Source: Octopus sinensis
Taxonomy: Eukaryota
Assembly (NCBI RefSeq): GCF_006345805.1
Contig: NC_043017.1
Span: 24,552,001 to 24,616,000, forward strand
Direction: 5' to 3'
DNA length: 64,000 nt
The translations under genes and the position numbers were made by a program. Under the pieces are notes generated by a model. That model made no database searches, was not told the DNA's origin, and was given only the letters and a program-made list of their open reading frames with translations. This document shows, piece by piece, positions 58,167 through 64,000 of the stretch (its first letter is position 1; every line of letters starts with the position of its first letter).

Positions 58167-58986
58167 CAGTGTTTATCAACCATTTTTTTGCTTACTCTAC
58201 TGGATCCAGGCAAACAGTCAATGTTTAAAAGTCCCATATATTTTTATAATATTGTCACGAAAGAATATAAAGTCAACTATTTGCAGCAAATGGAAGAAAT
58301 ATTCTTATAAATTTAACCATTTAGTGTTCACATTATTCTGCCACAATCCTTTTTGATCCACATTATTTTGAACTAATCAGGCATTATCTTGTAGCTAAGA
58401 GATTTTGATGAGGTAGCTGTTAATTTTTAAAACGATATTGTAGGGTTGGTGTGAGAGACTAGATCTGGCCAGTTTGAACATAAAACAGGCAGAATACTTT
58501 TGGCCGGTTTAAATGGTACGGAAATAAGACTGCTCTGTCTCTAGTTCTACAAATAATGGATTCTTAATTCGTTGAAAAATAATGTTAGTGTCACCAATTT
58601 AAAGCATGCTGCATGGTTTTTGTGTTTTTCTGAGGTGGACAATTTAAATTGGCATGGGAACGTGCGGTGTCAATTGGTGATGTAAACCTGGGAAAGGAAA
58701 AACTAGTCAGTGTGAACCCGGGCAGCAAAGAACTACATTTCACAAGACATCTAGCTGTGTATGACTACTTCTTTCGCTCTAAGCAATATGACTTGCTAGG
58801 CTGGCCTGCATCTTCCCAGCTGCTGGAATCGTGTTGGTGTCAGGAGGCTACATTTTGCAACAATATTATTAAGAATTGTTGAAAAAAATTTTTAAAAAAA
58901 TATTTCTTGCATTGTAGAAATTTATTGCACATGAATTTTAACAGAAAAAACCTTATGTGGTCCGCCAAGGACCCTGGTTGATACTG
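58167..58986. mobile_element. hAT-type non-autonomous element with 8-bp TSD and a nested piggyBac-like MITE
   Basis: ATCTAAAC at both 58159-58166 and 58987-58994. TIRs CAGTGTTTATCAACC / GGTTGATACTG. Confidence 0.75.
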
Positions 58987-59113: not shown

Positions 59114-59287
59114 TCAGCGAGCGGCAGTAGACACTTGCCAGACACGGATATTATTATCTGTGTAACCAGCAAACAATGTTTGACCATCAGCAGACCAAGC
59201 CAAAGACATACAGTTGGGTTGTGACTTTGTACTTTGGGTAATAACTTCTGGACGAAGCTCATCAACAACATTTTTGCCTTCAAGATC
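59114..59287 (-). CDS. RACK1: RACK1 terminal exon ([57 protein letters not shown])
   Basis: Acceptor ttttctgattgcag, 58 codons ending in TGA at 59114-59116. Confidence 0.97.
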
Positions 59288-59683
59288 CTGCAATCAGAAA
59301 AATAAAATAATTCACATGTATTTATATATATACACCGGAAAAAAAATATAACAACAAGCATAAGTTCATATATATTCCCTACAAACATTTCACCATTGTG
59401 GTTAATTGCAACTTCTGCAGTGGGTGTTCTAAGTGCAATTGGATGCTGAGTCACAGCAGTTCAACAGAGGAACATTTTTTACATTTGCTCTGTATATTAT
59501 AACCAGTAATACTGATAAGTACAGTAGTAATTACACTACTGCAGTGGAAATATGCTGGATGTTGATACTTTACAAGGAGCTCTCAACCCACCTACAGCAG
59601 TTGTACATATAACTGTACACACAAGAAACACTATCTATGCAGAGGGTAATTCATTATTTCAAGAGAGAGAGAGGAACTTGATA

Positions 59684-59905
59684 TACGAAGAGATACTGAA
59701 AAGTTTCTGGCTTTGTGTAAAAAAAAAATACAGGCGGATCAGTTGACTATGATTTTACTCAACACATTTCCCTCTCGGATTCACACACTTATTGCAGTGG
59801 TCCTTCAGTTTTTCCAAACCCTGTAAAAGAACTCAGAGGTTTGAGCCTCCAACCAGGCCTTTTGCAATACCTTTGAAGCCAAGAACCTTTCAGTACCTCC
59901 TTGTA
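59684..59905. mobile_element. Mariner-type MITE, same family, in the last RACK1 intron
   Basis: Same TIRs and internal sequence as 29151. Confidence 0.75.
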
Positions 59906-60054
59906 CAGAAACATTCCTAAGTTTATTTCATAAAAGTTATGAATTACAAAATTAGTAAGTAGTCATCAGGAACTATTATGCATTTAGCTGGATTAGAAAG
60001 GTTAATCCATAGATCTACAAACTAAATAACTTGTGGTTTTGCAATACTAAATTA

Positions 60055-60225
<171 letters not shown>

Positions 60226-60496
60226 CTAAAAAAAAGAAGTAAAAAATAAAATCAATGTAATTATGAAGAAATATTGGTTAAAAAATATTAATTCCAAACT
60301 CCCAGAAATAGATATTCTCATATTACTGTTCTCTAAATCATCACCTAACTAGAAATACAAATCAGAGGCACAGTTTTACTTTCAGGTCAAATAATGGTAT
60401 TGTATTGTGAAGTATACATAATTGTAGAGCAGGAGTCTTTAAATATATTGTAAAAAAAAAAAAAAATAAATAAAAAAAAAAAAAACATGAACTTGC

Positions 60497-60607
60497 CTTG
60501 CCACCTGAGGCACAGAGAGAACCATCAGGAGAAACAGTAACAGTGTTCAAAAATCCAGCATGTCCATGGTGATTAGTCTTCAGCTTGCAGTTGGTAAGAT
60601 TCCACAC
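60497..60607 (-). CDS. RACK1: RACK1 exon ([37 protein letters not shown])
   Basis: Near identical to the known RACK1 sequence, 111 nt. Acceptor ttttctag, donor AAG|GCAAGT (GC type). Confidence 0.98.
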
Positions 60608-60731
60608 CTAGAAAACATCAGATTATATTAACAAAATAACAGTAAATAATTCATACCATTTATCAGGTTTCAGAAATATCAGAGAGCTTGCATAATGCAA
60701 TATTTATCTGAGTATGGAAACATCTACAAAC

Positions 60732-60827
60732 CTTTACAATTTTATCCCAGCCACAGGACACAATGATAGGGTGAGTGGTGCTAGGAGAAAAACGGACACA
60801 AGATGCCCAATCTGCGTGGCCCTCTTC
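60732..60827 (-). CDS. RACK1: RACK1 exon ([32 protein letters not shown]), equivalent to human exon 4
   Basis: Recognisable WD40 sequence, 96 nt, cag|...|gt boundaries, phase 0-0. Confidence 0.97.
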
Positions 60828-60900
60828 CTGAAATGGAGAAATGAAATAGTAAGGAAAAAAAAAACCCCTTTAAAATACTGATGCAATGTAACAAAGAAAC

Positions 60901-60974
60901 TTGCAAGTCCTCATAATTGCAGGATTATCAACATTTAAGATAATGAAATGAAAGTTTTAATCAGTGGACTGCAA
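60901..60974 (-). ncRNA. SNORD96: Box C/D snoRNA, SNORD96-like (5.8S rRNA Gm75 guide), copy 1, intronic in RACK1
   Basis: Terminal stem TTGCA-GTCC/GGAC-T-TGCAA, C box CTGATTA, C' ATGTTGA, guide TCCTGCAATT directly before D box ATGA. Ends about 70 nt upstream of the 3' splice site. Confidence 0.8.
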
Positions 60975-61329
60975 GGAACAATATATATCATGTACAAAAT
61001 TAACATCTGAGAAAAGGAGTAAATTTGCCAATTGAAAAAGAAACAAATTTTTTATCTTTCTGAAAACATGCCCCTCCCCACCATAATACATAACCATGCC
61101 TCGAACCCCAGAACTGATGCTACTTCAGAAGGTAAACGGTCAAGTGGAATCAGTGTCTAAAGGGACATAACTAAATATATTTTCTCCAATGCTGTACTGA
61201 TTGTTCCAAGACTAAAGGAAAAGCATTTTAAGATCTCTCAATAATTTTCATTTTTGAAACACAGGCAGCAAAGAATCCGCCGGGGACCTGTCAGTATGAT
61301 TGCAAATACAAGTGCCTGAAATGCAATTC

Positions 61330-61660
61330 CTTTGAAGGATAGCTGGAGTAATGTTACTAGATAGGATGCGTAACTTGGTAATCAAGGAGTCTCTCCAGGT
61401 CAAACCACTGCCTCTTTACACAGTTCTGGTACTACAGAAGTGTGATTGGAATACCAAAGAAATGGATTACAAAAATTCTTTGAACCAAGCTAAGCCAAGC
61501 AGCAGGAAACCTGATGGTAGACCAAGAACAAGATAGATGGGTAATATCCAGTCTCAGCTGGTTATACTTGGGAGACCAGGAAGAAATGACAGTTGCATCT
61601 GATAGGACCCAACAGAGGAGTATGTGAGGACTTTATCCCAATGACCCTCCCAGGAATTGT
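61330..61660 (+). mobile_element. Old RTE 3' fragment in a RACK1 intron
   Basis: RIAGVMLLDRMRN..IKESLQV...GRPRTR with stops. Confidence 0.5.
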
Positions 61661-62522
61661 GGGTAGAGAAGGTAAATGGAAAACATAGGCAGTGTATTTT
61701 ATTTAAAACAGAGTCACAAAAGGGCTTTATACATTGATTGATAAACCAAACAACATCAATATAATGTGAAGACTCTCAGAAAAAAGGTGTTCTCATTCCA
61801 TATCAATAGCTAATACAATTGTTTCCATCACTGAGTCTGAAATAGGGATTAATGTTGTTTGGTTAGCAAAGTATTAATTAGTACACTGCACACTAACCAT
61901 TCCTTCCCAGAACTTAAGTCCTCTAGAATTCTTAACTCACCAATGTTTTTCCAGGAAAAGTTCAAAATTAACATCAACCACAACTTTGCCCTAAGTTTGA
62001 GAGTGTCTACAAAACATGTTACTGCGATTAATTCATCAGCAGCAGCATCGGTTTGAGCATCTACTTTTCTCTGCCCACATGGTTTGGACAGAATGGTTTA
62101 AGGTAAATTTTATTTATGGCTAGATGCTCTTCCCGCCAGTAATCGTCAACTGTTTCCAAGGTAATATTTCTCCATGGCCAAACATGTTTAGAAGACTGGA
62201 ATTGAAGAACACCACTTGTATGACAGTGACACTCATTTACAGCTACCACAGGATGTTATGGCAAGGATTTGGCCAGTCTGGGGTTATAGTAAACACTTGC
62301 CTAAGGTGCCAAATAGTTGAACTGAACCTGAAAGCATATAGTTGGGAAGCAAACTTTTTGATCACACAACCATGCCTGTACCTATAACCAAGACTAATAA
62401 GGCAAAAAATTGAAGGAACTTGTACGAGACAAAATATAGCAGATTATGGAGTTAAGAAAAATTACTTCTAAACCATACAAATCTGTAAAAGCAAGCAAAG
62501 CAAATATAGCCATGAAGAAAAT

Positions 62523-62592
62523 TGCAAGTCCTCATAATTGCAGGATTATCAGCACAAAAGATAATGAAATAGGTTTAAATCATTGGACTGCA
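62523..62592 (-). ncRNA. SNORD96: Box C/D snoRNA, SNORD96-like, copy 2, intronic in RACK1
   Basis: TGCAGTCC-A-ATGATTT...CCTATTTCATT...GTGCTGA-TAA-TCCTGCAATT-ATGA-GGACTTGCA. Similarity to copy 1 is confined to the snoRNA body. Confidence 0.8.
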
Positions 62593-64000
62593 GAAAGAGA
62601 ATCCCACCCCACAAAATTTTTTCTGGTTAAAATACGAGTTTGCTATACAGCCTATCTTCACACTCCAAATTTGTCATTTCACAAGACTCACAAATTTTAA
62701 ATAGAGGAATTCAGAAAATTAGCAAAATACCTATATGAAATAAATAAAAAAAAAGGTTCTAATTCATATAGGCACAGATGTGGCTGTCTGACACCTCAGG
62801 CAAGAGTCTTCTACTATAACCCTGGTGGAAGCTGAAAGATCATAGTATATATGTTTTTTGTCTCCCACCGCTCAACAACTGGTGTTGGTTTGTCTACAAA
62901 CCCGTAACTTAGCAGTTCGGCAAAATAGACTGATGAAATAAGTACCAGGCTTCCAAAAATTTGTAAAGTACTTCTGTGGGTGGGTGAGGCAACTAAATCC
63001 TTTCACGGCAGTACCCCAGCATGGTCACATGCAAATGACTGAAACAATAAAATGATCTAGATATTAAGAACCAGGACAGTCTCGGGTGAAATGGTACTAC
63101 CTGATCAAGATCGTTCACATCCAGCTCAACCACATCATCCATCATAATACTGTACAGCATTCAGGAAGTCTGTAGGACAACCAATCTGTGTATGCATAAG
63201 GATGTACCAGTTGTATTTAGCTTTCCAGTAATGCCTTATAAGGCTTACACATGTCAAACAATATCAGTGCTTGTGAGAAGACTAACAAAGTCTTCACAAC
63301 AATGCCTCAAATACATACATCTGTTACAACCACGAGGGCTCAATAAACACAAACAAAACCTAAAATCTAGTCTCCTTCATATACTAATGAAGTAAACATC
63401 ACAACCACAGAAAAAAATGTAAAAAGTTCATTGTGTGAAAGAATGGACTGTTTTCTTCACAGCCCCCCATATCACCAGGATGTTGTAATTGCTACCTAAT
63501 AATTGAAAGTGAATCAGAGCTGTTGTATGGATTCACTGCCTGATAGATTAGTTATCAATCCTTTTAATACTAACCCCTTTGAGACCACCCTTGGGTTAAT
63601 GATACAAACCCATTTTGAAAGTTTTATGTATATATATATCACCCTTTAGCAATCAGATTATTCTGTCAAATGTGATGTTTATACACATTGATTTAAATTA
63701 ATCATGCATTATCTTATGATTGTTTATTTCTAGAATAATATTGTATGGTAAGTGTGAGAAGCCAGATCTAGCCAGGCTGAAGATAAAACAGAGATTATTT
63801 TGGTTAAATGTAGTCAGTTTAAATGTCAAAGGGTTAAATTCCAAATACCAGCTTTTTTTCTTCTCTCTAGTTTCAGCTCAGAGCTGCAGCCATGCTGATG
63901 CACCGCCGTTATAAAAGGTTAAGTCGACGTTGGAGGAATTTGAACTCAGAACGTAAAGCCTGAAGAAATGCCGTTAAACATTTTGCCTAACGTGCTAACA

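What the first reader, a model, noticed from the sequence alone, without database searches (positions are those of the whole stretch)
60901..62592. Duplicated SNORD96-like snoRNAs in a RACK1 intron: snoRNA/host pairing shared between a mollusc-like genome and vertebrates
Seen: two about 70-nt elements (60901-60974, 62523-62592, - strand) match each other while their flanks do not. Each has a terminal stem, C, C' and D-type boxes, and the 10-mer TCCTGCAATT directly before the D box. Known: metazoan 5.8S rRNA contains AAUUGCAGGA. Human SNORD96A sits in a GNB2L1/RACK1 intron and guides 5.8S Gm75 with the same guide, and the D+5 rule here points to that same G. Inference: the RACK1-SNORD96 association may predate the protostome/deuterostome split, with a lineage-specific duplication. 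These RNAs are probably unannotated.
Basis: partly seen in the sequence, partly recalled or inferred. Interest (0 to 1): 0.85.

Follow-up and report, generated by a model that had tools for sequence, protein, structure and literature searches.

The report
SNORD96-type snoRNAs in octopus RACK1
Two ~70-nt box C/D small nucleolar RNA genes in an intron of the octopus RACK1 gene are relatives of human SNORD96A, which sits in the same host gene and aims at the same G of 5.8S rRNA, so this RNA-host pairing most likely dates back at least to the common ancestor of molluscs and vertebrates.

Summary
Two elements on the minus strand (62592-62523 and 60973-60902) are 87.5% alike in otherwise unalignable intron. 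They occur nowhere else in the 2.7-Gb genome. Each has a terminal stem, a C box (UGAUUU or UGAUUA), a C' box, the guide UCCUGCAAUU and a D box (AUGA).

The genome is an Octopus of the vulgaris/sinensis group. The host is its single RACK1 gene, in the intron between codons 144 and 145. The octopus 5.8S rRNA carries AAUUGCAGGA, and the D+5 rule points to the G that matches human Gm75.

Rfam SNORD96 is the best family for both copies, but below its gathering score (30.5 and 26.6 bits against 43). A model built only from non-cephalopod RACK1-intron RNAs finds exactly these two elements in the 64-kb window.

The same kind of RNA lies in RACK1 introns of three Octopus genomes, Argonauta, Sepia, a scallop, Lingula, a nemertean, amphioxus and orangutan. 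I found none in RACK1 of abalone or two corals. The host gene is constant, while the intron and copy number vary.

The octopus intron also holds a second, 18S-directed snoRNA type in two copies.

Verdict: real, ordinary in mechanism, and new members of a known family. The evolutionary result is of moderate interest. No expression or methylation data were available.

The parts
62523..62592 (-). SNORD96-type box C/D snoRNA, copy A (70 nt)
   Evidence: Sequence read. Rfam SNORD96 26.6 bits, E 0.034. Model R2, built without cephalopods, 31.8 bits, E 9e-4. 69/70 identical in O. bimaculoides. Conserved island against Argonauta.
62577..62583 (-). C box of copy A, AUGAUUU (variant of RUGAUGA)
   Evidence: Position 6 (U) pairs with D-box position 1 (A).
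62546..62552 (-). C' box of copy A, CUGAUAA
   Evidence: Aligned to the C' region of the SNORD96 consensus.
62536..62545 (-). Guide UCCUGCAAUU of copy A, complementary to 5.8S AAUUGCAGGA
62532..62535 (-). D box of copy A, AUGA (variant of CUGA)
60901..60974 (-). SNORD96-type box C/D snoRNA, copy B (core 60973-60902). It ends 74 nt before the 3' splice site.
   Evidence: Rfam SNORD96 30.5 bits, E 0.003. R2 34.6 bits, E 2.5e-4. Conserved in O. bimaculoides and Argonauta.
60958..60964 (-). C box of copy B, CUGAUUA
60925..60931 (-). C' box of copy B, UUGAUAA
60915..60924 (-). Guide UCCUGCAAUU of copy B
60911..60914 (-). D box of copy B, AUGA
61771..61837 (-). Second kind of box C/D snoRNA in the same intron (C GUGAUGG, D' UUGA, C' AUGAGAA, D CUGA, stem GACUC/GAGUC). 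Its D' guide pairs with 18S AGCUAAUACA. A sister copy lies just outside the window at about 64160-64089.
60828..64000 (-). The part of the RACK1 intron between codons 144 and 145 that lies in the window. The intron runs on to about 65306.
   Evidence: tblastn and splice sites. The 3' splice site AG at 60829-60828 was read.
60732..60827 (-). RACK1 exon encoding residues 145-176 (EEGHADW...DKIVK)
60497..60607 (-). RACK1 exon, residues 177-213
60085..60225 (-). RACK1 exon, residues 214-260
59117..59287 (-). RACK1 last coding exon, residues 261-317

Best explanation
The two elements are intron-encoded box C/D small nucleolar RNA genes of the SNORD96 kind. Inferred from what is known of intronic C/D snoRNAs: they are transcribed as part of the RACK1 pre-mRNA and freed from the spliced intron by debranching and exonuclease trimming up to the 8-9 bp terminal stem. 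They would then be packaged with the kink-turn binding protein (Snu13/15.5K), Nop56, Nop58 and the methyltransferase fibrillarin. Shown from sequence: the 10-nt guide UCCUGCAAUU next to the D box pairs with 5.8S rRNA AAUUGCAGGA, and the fifth guide position faces the G of AAUUG. This is about G74 by the Rfam-defined 5' end, and it matches human G75 and Drosophila G74. Inferred: that G receives a 2'-O-methyl group. Only the D-box guide has an evident target; the 5' half has no clear D' box. The unusual boxes (UGAUUA with AUGA) keep the kink-turn pair through a U-A for G-C swap. The RNA and its residence in RACK1 were most likely inherited from the bilaterian ancestor. Since then there have been repeated duplications and moves between introns of the same gene. 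In octopods the intron carries two units, each made of an 18S-directed and a 5.8S-directed snoRNA.
For: Anatomy and target; human numbering. Family: SNORD96 is the best Rfam family for both copies, and the orangutan RACK1 copy passes Rfam's cut-off at 52.5 bits. Independent model: R2, built only from Lingula, scallop, amphioxus and orangutan copies, finds exactly these two elements in the window (34.6 and 31.8 bits; next best 14 bits). Structure: all 5 terminal-stem pairs show double changes, 95% of cells are paired, and 0 of 500 shuffles reach this. The kink-turn pair covaries. Selection: against Argonauta, the only conserved pieces of the 4.5-kb intron are the four snoRNAs. Copy A is 69/70 identical in O. 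bimaculoides, while the surrounding intron is about 85-86% identical. Uniqueness in the genome. Distribution in RACK1 introns of 10 genomes from 5 phyla. The site is methylated in human (predicted guide, PMC7812721) and in Drosophila (Gm74 measured; guide snoRNA:Me5.8S-G74).
Against: I had no RNA evidence: no small-RNA reads, and no methylation map of octopus 5.8S. The Rfam scores are below the curated threshold. The guide duplex is only 10 bp in cephalopods, at the short end for C/D guides. Copy A has the weaker C box (AUGAUUU). No recognisable D' box is present. Much of the similarity between phyla is in parts constrained by function (guide, boxes), so homology leans partly on the shared host gene. 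The intron differs between lineages. RACK1 of abalone and two anthozoans has no copy. The 5.8S copies I read come from rDNA-like pieces scattered over many chromosomes, though all four read agree at the target.
Confidence: 0.85

Rival explanations
1. Convergence: snoRNAs guiding the same conserved 5.8S site were captured independently by RACK1 in several lineages. RACK1 is a broadly and highly expressed gene that readily hosts snoRNAs. The pairing would then not be inherited from the bilaterian ancestor.
For: The intron differs between lineages: 36|37, 94|95, 144|145 and 260|261. RACK1 hosts unrelated snoRNAs in different animals: SNORD95 in orangutan, and SNORD72-like and SNORD52-like candidates in Lingula and Tubulanus. 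The published view is that snoRNA-host links drift over deep time (PMC3511168). Abalone and corals lack a copy in RACK1.
Against: Copies share features not dictated by the target. All invertebrate copies have the UGAUUA/AUGA box variant. Octopus and amphioxus share the stem AGUCC/GGA. Sepia and Lingula share UGCCC/GGGCA. Lingula, scallop and Tubulanus share the 5' stretch AAAAAGACAC. Independent landing in the same one gene in five phyla is far less likely than inheritance with duplication inside the gene.
Confidence: 0.1
2. One of the two octopus copies, most likely copy A with C box AUGAUUU and 1.7 kb from the 3' splice site, is a decaying duplicate that is no longer processed into a stable snoRNA.
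For: Copy A has the weaker C box and the lower model scores. In vertebrates the usual pattern is one snoRNA per intron placed near the branch point (my knowledge, not tested here). Only copy B, 74 nt from the splice site, fits that pattern.
Against: Copy A is 69/70 identical between the window and O. bimaculoides, against about 85% for the flanks. Argonauta also keeps two copies. The long terminal stem suits splicing-independent processing. Intronic clusters of snoRNAs are reported in Drosophila.
Confidence: 0.1
3. The conserved islands are intronic regulatory elements of RACK1 (splicing or transcription), or parts of a mobile element, and only resemble snoRNAs.
For: None beyond their intronic position. 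A short ORF on the opposite strand (62446-62700, 84 aa) overlaps copy A.
Against: They have full C/D architecture with covarying stem and kink-turn pairs, a guide matching rRNA, and no other copies in the genome. The ORF is a mechanical call in AT-rich intron.
Confidence: 0.03

Closest known systems
Human/vertebrate SNORD96A (U96a), Rfam RF00055
   Same: Box C/D snoRNA of about 70-80 nt in an intron of RACK1 (GNB2L1). It has the same guide core UCCUGCAAUU next to the D box and the same predicted target, 5.8S Gm75 (PMC7812721). The orangutan copy was read.
   Different: The vertebrate copy has canonical boxes (GUGAUGA, CUGA), a longer guide (UGUCCUGCAAUU) and a different terminal stem. It is a single copy in the intron at codons 94|95. 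Octopus has UGAUUA/AUGA boxes, a 10-bp guide, and two copies in the 144|145 intron together with two other snoRNAs. Octopus scores 26.6-30.5 bits against 52.5 bits for orangutan.
Drosophila snoRNA:Me5.8S-G74 (snoRNA:CD34)
   Same: It guides the matching 5.8S Gm site, which has been measured in S2 cells (bioRxiv 10.64898/2026.05.21.726978).
   Different: I could not obtain its sequence or host gene from the papers held, so neither homology nor host sharing was tested.
Plant snoR39BY, grouped with RF00055; clan CL00072 with snR39B
   Same: The Rfam SNORD96 consensus carries the same 5.8S guide. A paper lists AtsnoR39BY under ~RF00055 (PMC3511168).
   Different: The consensus also has a D' guide to the large-subunit rRNA (CACCAUCUUUCGGGA-CUGA). 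Octopus keeps only CAUUAUCUU there, without a D' box.
U54-type box variant (Rfam RF00206)
   Same: Same compensated box pair, C box UGAUUU with D box AUGA. This explains the weak U54 hits.
   Different: Different guides and targets. The likeness is confined to the boxes.
Other snoRNAs hosted by RACK1 orthologues: SNORD95 in vertebrates; snR24/U24 in yeast ASC1 (my memory, not checked)
   Same: They show that RACK1 is a favoured snoRNA host.
   Different: Unrelated guides. I found no SNORD95 match in the octopus gene.

Membership tests
Box C/D snoRNA | C box (RUGAUGA) near the 5' end and D box (CUGA) near the 3' end, able to form a kink-turn | tested here: met
   UGAUUA or UGAUUU with AUGA. The deviating positions (C6, D1) pair with each other: U-A in 12 copies and G-C in orangutan, 100% paired.
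Box C/D snoRNA | Terminal stem joining the 5' and 3' ends | tested here: met
   UGCAGUCC/GGACUUGCA in both copies. Across 13 copies all 5 pairs show double changes, 95.4% of cells are paired, and 0 of 500 shuffles reach this.
Box C/D snoRNA | Internal C' and D' boxes | tested here: inconclusive
   A C'-like UGAUAA lies 10 nt before the D box. I found no recognisable D' box.
Box C/D snoRNA | Stable ~70-nt RNA bound by fibrillarin, Nop56, Nop58 and Snu13 | not testable with these tools
   No expression or binding data were available.
SNORD96 (RF00055) | Guide next to the D box complementary to 5.8S rRNA, with the D+5 position on the G matching human G75 | tested here: met
   The duplex with this genome's 5.8S is 10 bp, and position 5 faces the G of AAUUG.
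SNORD96 (RF00055) | Score at or above Rfam's gathering threshold (43 bits) | tested here: not met
   30.5 and 26.6 bits, with no hit at gathering. It is still the top family (E 0.003 and 0.034 in 2.1 kb). This is a curation cut-off, not a biological feature. A model that includes a bona fide member (orangutan, 52.5 bits) and no cephalopods recovers both copies at E 2.5e-4 and 9e-4.
SNORD96 (RF00055) | Located in an intron of RACK1/GNB2L1 (true of SNORD96A) | tested here: met
   The intron differs from the one in orangutan.
SNORD96 (RF00055) | The target G is 2'-O-methylated in this organism | not testable with these tools
   I found no methylation map for cephalopod rRNA.

The most novel reading that the evidence does not exclude
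RACK1 has housed the guide for the 5.8S Gm75-equivalent site without interruption since the last common ancestor of protostomes and deuterostomes. This would be one of the deepest snoRNA-host associations on record, kept while the RNA hopped between introns of the one gene. In addition, the ancestral lophotrochozoan RNA would have been a dual guide (18S at D', 5.8S at D), as still seen in Lingula. In cephalopods it would have duplicated and split into two single-purpose snoRNAs, with Sepia preserving half-decayed intermediates.
Probability: 0.45. Interest if true: 0.6.

Novelty: new member of a known kind. Interest (0 to 1): 0.5.

Why it matters
The prevailing comparative picture is that snoRNA families are ancient but their genomic homes are not. 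Host associations are said to drift, constrained only by the need for broad expression (PMC3511168). Here one guide RNA stays in one host gene across at least five phyla, while its intron and copy number change freely. That is a clean natural case for asking what ties a snoRNA to a particular host. Candidate ties are co-regulation with a ribosomal protein gene, or simply easy duplication within a gene. It also adds snoRNA annotations for cephalopods, bivalves, brachiopods, nemerteans and amphioxus that Rfam's threshold would miss. It predicts a testable 5.8S Gm, and an 18S Um, in octopus ribosomes. Finally, it gives a possible worked example of a dual-guide snoRNA splitting into two. The mechanism itself is ordinary.

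Tried and rejected
(1) Two RACK1 paralogues in Octopus. Protein clustering put the window's protein and the named Octopus RACK1 in different clusters. Alignment shows they are identical, and the cluster split comes from a 5' extension. The genome has one multi-exon locus plus fragments carrying stop codons.

(2) Dispersed repeat. Rejected.

(3) Genome-wide Rfam SNORD96 search of the assembly. It scores only 51 of about 790,000 first-look candidates and did not even list the window's copies. Its three weak hits lack the 5.8S guide. It is therefore not a census.

(5) A MAFFT alignment of non-cephalopod copies misplaced the C boxes (A3). I replaced it with a model-guided alignment (A4).

(6) A large-subunit rRNA target for the 5' half (CAUUAUCUU) and for the D guide of the 18S-type snoRNA (AACACCUUUUUU). 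The octopus LSU pieces I could fetch read GAAAGGGUGUC or GAAAGAGUGUC at the second site and lacked the first. Neither target is supported.

(7) Coding potential. Only short mechanical ORFs lie in the intron.

(8) Host gene of the Drosophila 5.8S-G74 guide. I did not find it in the papers or supplements held.

(9) Literature on invertebrate SNORD96 or on octopus snoRNAs. Nothing specific turned up.

Full report
**What is in the sequence**

On the minus strand, 62592-62523 (copy A) and 60973-60902 (copy B) read as follows:
- Copy A: UGCAGUCC A AUGAUUU AAACCUAUUUCAUUAUCUUUUGUG CUGAUAA UCCUGCAAUU AUGA GGACUUGCA
- Copy B: UGCAGUCC A CUGAUUA AAACUUUCAUUUCAUUAUCUUAAAUGU UGAUAA UCCUGCAAUU AUGA GGACUUGCA

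The two are 87.5% identical over 80 nt, and the alignment stops at their ends. A search of the whole 2.72-Gb assembly with the 74-mer finds only these two places. The 15-mer that joins guide and D box has five places. The other three have no C box and no stem.

**Where it is**

The window is G000:C21:24552001-24616000. tblastn with RACK1 maps four exons in the window (59117-60827) and three more beyond its end, in a fetched extension (L003 = window 60001-70000).
- The spliced protein is 100% identical to the RACK1 protein of Octopus vulgaris and O. sinensis.
- The region is 99.3% identical to an O. vulgaris assembly over 10 kb.
- An apparent second RACK1 cluster was an artefact of clustering, and the assembly has one multi-exon locus.
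- Both elements lie in the phase-0 intron between codons 144 and 145 (CKYTIT|EEGH). This intron runs from 60828 to about 65306, so its 5' end is outside the window.
- Copy B ends 74 nt before the 3' splice site. Copy A lies 1.7 kb upstream of it.

**Target**

Rfam's 5.8S model finds many copies in this genome. The four I read all contain GCGAAUUGCAGGACUCAG.
- The guide pairs with AAUUGCAGGA over 10 bp, and the next position is an A:C mismatch.
- The fifth guide nucleotide from the D box faces the G of AAUUG. This is about G74 from the Rfam-defined 5' end.
- A paper states that SNORD96A lies in a GNB2L1 intron and is predicted to direct 5.8S Gm75 (PMC7812721).
- In Drosophila the matching Gm74 has been measured, and its guide is annotated as snoRNA:Me5.8S-G74.

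**Boxes**

The C box is UGAUUA or UGAUUU and the D box is AUGA. In the box C/D kink-turn, C-box position 6 pairs with D-box position 1 (established knowledge of the motif). Here G-C is replaced by U-A. In my alignment of 13 copies this pair is U-A in all 12 invertebrate copies and G-C in orangutan. The same variant characterises Rfam's U54 family, which explains weak U54 hits. A C'-like UGAUAA precedes the guide. I see no D' box, so only the D guide has an evident target.

**Family**

- At gathering thresholds Rfam finds nothing in the window.
- With E-value reporting on 60700-62800, SNORD96 (RF00055) is the best family for both copies. The scores are 30.5 bits (E 0.003) and 26.6 bits (E 0.034), against a cut-off of 43.
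- As a positive control, the orangutan RACK1 locus gives SNORD96 at 52.5 bits and SNORD95 at 93 bits.

**Relatives**

I fetched RACK1 loci of other animals through their proteins. I then looked for the guide pattern and for matches to a covariance model, with exons mapped by tblastn. RNAs with a C box UGAUUA, the guide (G/A/U/C)UCCUGCAAUU and a D box AUGA lie in RACK1 introns as follows:

| Animal | Copies | Intron (octopus codons) |
|---|---|---|
| O. vulgaris | 2 | 144\|145 |
| O. bimaculoides | 2 | 144\|145 |
| Argonauta hians | 2 | 144\|145 |
| Sepia pharaonis | 2, plus 2 diverged | 144\|145 |
| Ylistrum balloti (scallop) | 2 | 36\|37 and 94\|95 |
| Lingula anatina (brachiopod) | 1 | 94\|95 |
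| Tubulanus polymorphus (nemertean) | 4 in tandem | 260\|261 |
| Branchiostoma belcheri (amphioxus) | 2 | 144\|145 and 260\|261 |
| Orangutan | 1 (SNORD96A) | 94\|95 |

With filters off, the model finds nothing in RACK1 of Haliotis, Stylophora or Paramuricea.

**Is this more than circular?**

- The terminal stem covaries. All five pairs show double changes, 95.4% of cells are paired, no shuffle in 500 reaches this, and slid registers collapse to 9-51% paired.
- Model R2 was built only from the Lingula, scallop, amphioxus and orangutan copies. Run over the whole window and other loci, it returns the two claimed elements as the only significant hits in the window: 34.6 bits (E 2.5e-4) and 31.8 bits (E 9e-4), with the next best at 14 bits.
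- Copies not used for either model were also found: the second Argonauta copy, two Sepia copies and all four Tubulanus copies.

**Selection**

Between the window and Argonauta, the only alignable pieces of the 4.5-kb intron are four snoRNA-sized islands. Between the window and O. bimaculoides the intron is about 85-86% identical, while copy A is 69/70 identical.

**A second snoRNA type in the same intron**

- At 61837-61771 there is a canonical C/D RNA: C GUGAUGG, D' UUGA, C' AUGAGAA, D CUGA, stem GACUC/GAGUC.
- A sister copy, 88% alike, lies at about 64160-64089, just outside the window.
- Both are conserved in O. bimaculoides, and one is conserved in Argonauta.
- Their D' guide pairs over 10 bp with octopus 18S AGCUAAUACA.
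- The order along the intron is 18S-type, 5.8S-type A, 18S-type, 5.8S-type B. The two pairs are about equally diverged (88% and 87.5%). This fits one duplication of a two-gene unit (inference).
- The same D' guide, GUAUUAGCUA-UUGA, sits in the Lingula SNORD96-type RNA, which therefore carries both guides.
- Two Sepia copies keep this 18S guide and the Sepia/Lingula-type stem and C box, but have a decayed 5.8S guide (UCUUGCAU-AUGA). They still score 42 and 35 bits with model R1.
- This suggests a dual-guide ancestor that duplicated and specialised in cephalopods. I hold that as a moderate-confidence inference.

**How it most likely works**

- Shown: the gene anatomy, the complementarity to this genome's 5.8S, the covariation, the conservation, the single host gene, and the distribution across animals.
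- Inferred from the known biology of intronic box C/D snoRNAs: release from the RACK1 intron, assembly with Snu13, Nop56, Nop58 and fibrillarin, and 2'-O-methylation of the 5.8S G.
- Not shown: any RNA product or any methylation in octopus.

**Comparison with what is known**

- The SNORD96A-RACK1 pairing in vertebrates and the Gm75 site are known.
- Rfam's SNORD96 family reaches plants (snoR39BY listed under ~RF00055; PMC3511168).
- The same paper argues that intronic locations of snoRNAs are not stable over deep time, a model it calls 'constrained drift'.
- I found no paper describing SNORD96-type RNAs in invertebrate RACK1, or octopus snoRNAs at all. The held library is incomplete, so this is not proof of novelty.

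**Verdict**

These are real genes, and new members of a known family with a known mechanism. The added value is comparative: the host gene has stayed the same across at least five phyla while the intron and copy number changed, and a dual guide may have split in two. Convergent capture by a favoured host gene remains a minority alternative. Interest is moderate.

Noticed in passing
window 61771-61837 (-); sister copy at about 64089-64160, outside the window (L003 4089-4160): A second, canonical box C/D snoRNA type sits in the same RACK1 intron. Its D' guide pairs 10 bp with 18S AGCUAAUACA. It matches no Rfam family (best SNORD38/U54, 24 bits). It is conserved in O. bimaculoides and Argonauta, and the same guide occurs in the Lingula and two Sepia SNORD96-type RNAs.
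   Followed up: partly
L008, L009, L010, L014, L015, L017, L019, L031 (upstream of RACK1): RACK1 lies head-to-head with a ~311-aa Metallophos (PPP-type phosphatase) gene in abalone, scallop, Lingula, Octopus, Sepia, Tubulanus and amphioxus. This is an old two-gene neighbourhood.
   Followed up: no
L010 3989-4073; L009 3780-3863; L031 3988-4073: The 5' halves of the Lingula, scallop and Tubulanus copies (UGAUUA-AAAAAGACAC, stem UUGCCC/GGGCAA in Lingula) give weak Rfam SNORD97 hits (27-29 bits, E 0.4-0.9). Whether this reflects kinship or chance is open.
   Followed up: no
window 62553-62576 and 60932-60957 (5' halves of copies A and B): Octopod copies keep CAUUAUCUU, which cmscan aligns to the large-subunit guide of the Rfam SNORD96 consensus (CACCAUCUUUCGGGA-CUGA). 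No D' box follows, and I could not confirm a target.
   Followed up: partly
L010 4973-5053; L031 3014-3088, 2355-2439, 3399-3486: Other sub-threshold box C/D candidates lie in RACK1 introns of Lingula (SNORD72-like, 35 bits) and Tubulanus (SNORD52-like, 35 bits; snoZ157-like, 29 bits). RACK1 appears to be a general snoRNA host.
   Followed up: no
G000, many contigs: 5.8S-like and 28S-like sequences are scattered over many chromosomes of the assembly (40 or more hits each, with varying scores). The stretch downstream of one 5.8S copy does not continue into canonical 28S. These are probably rDNA-derived fragments or assembly breaks.
   Followed up: no
window 58291-58488 and 63616-63791: Two stretches, one just downstream of RACK1 and one inside the snoRNA intron, share a 70-79% direct repeat. 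It is probably a dispersed element.
   Followed up: no
L016 5907-5991 (Argonauta RACK1 intron): A palindromic hairpin gives sub-threshold hits to a microRNA family on both strands (mir-7131, 41-44 bits against a cut-off of 74), right after the 18S-type snoRNA.
   Followed up: no
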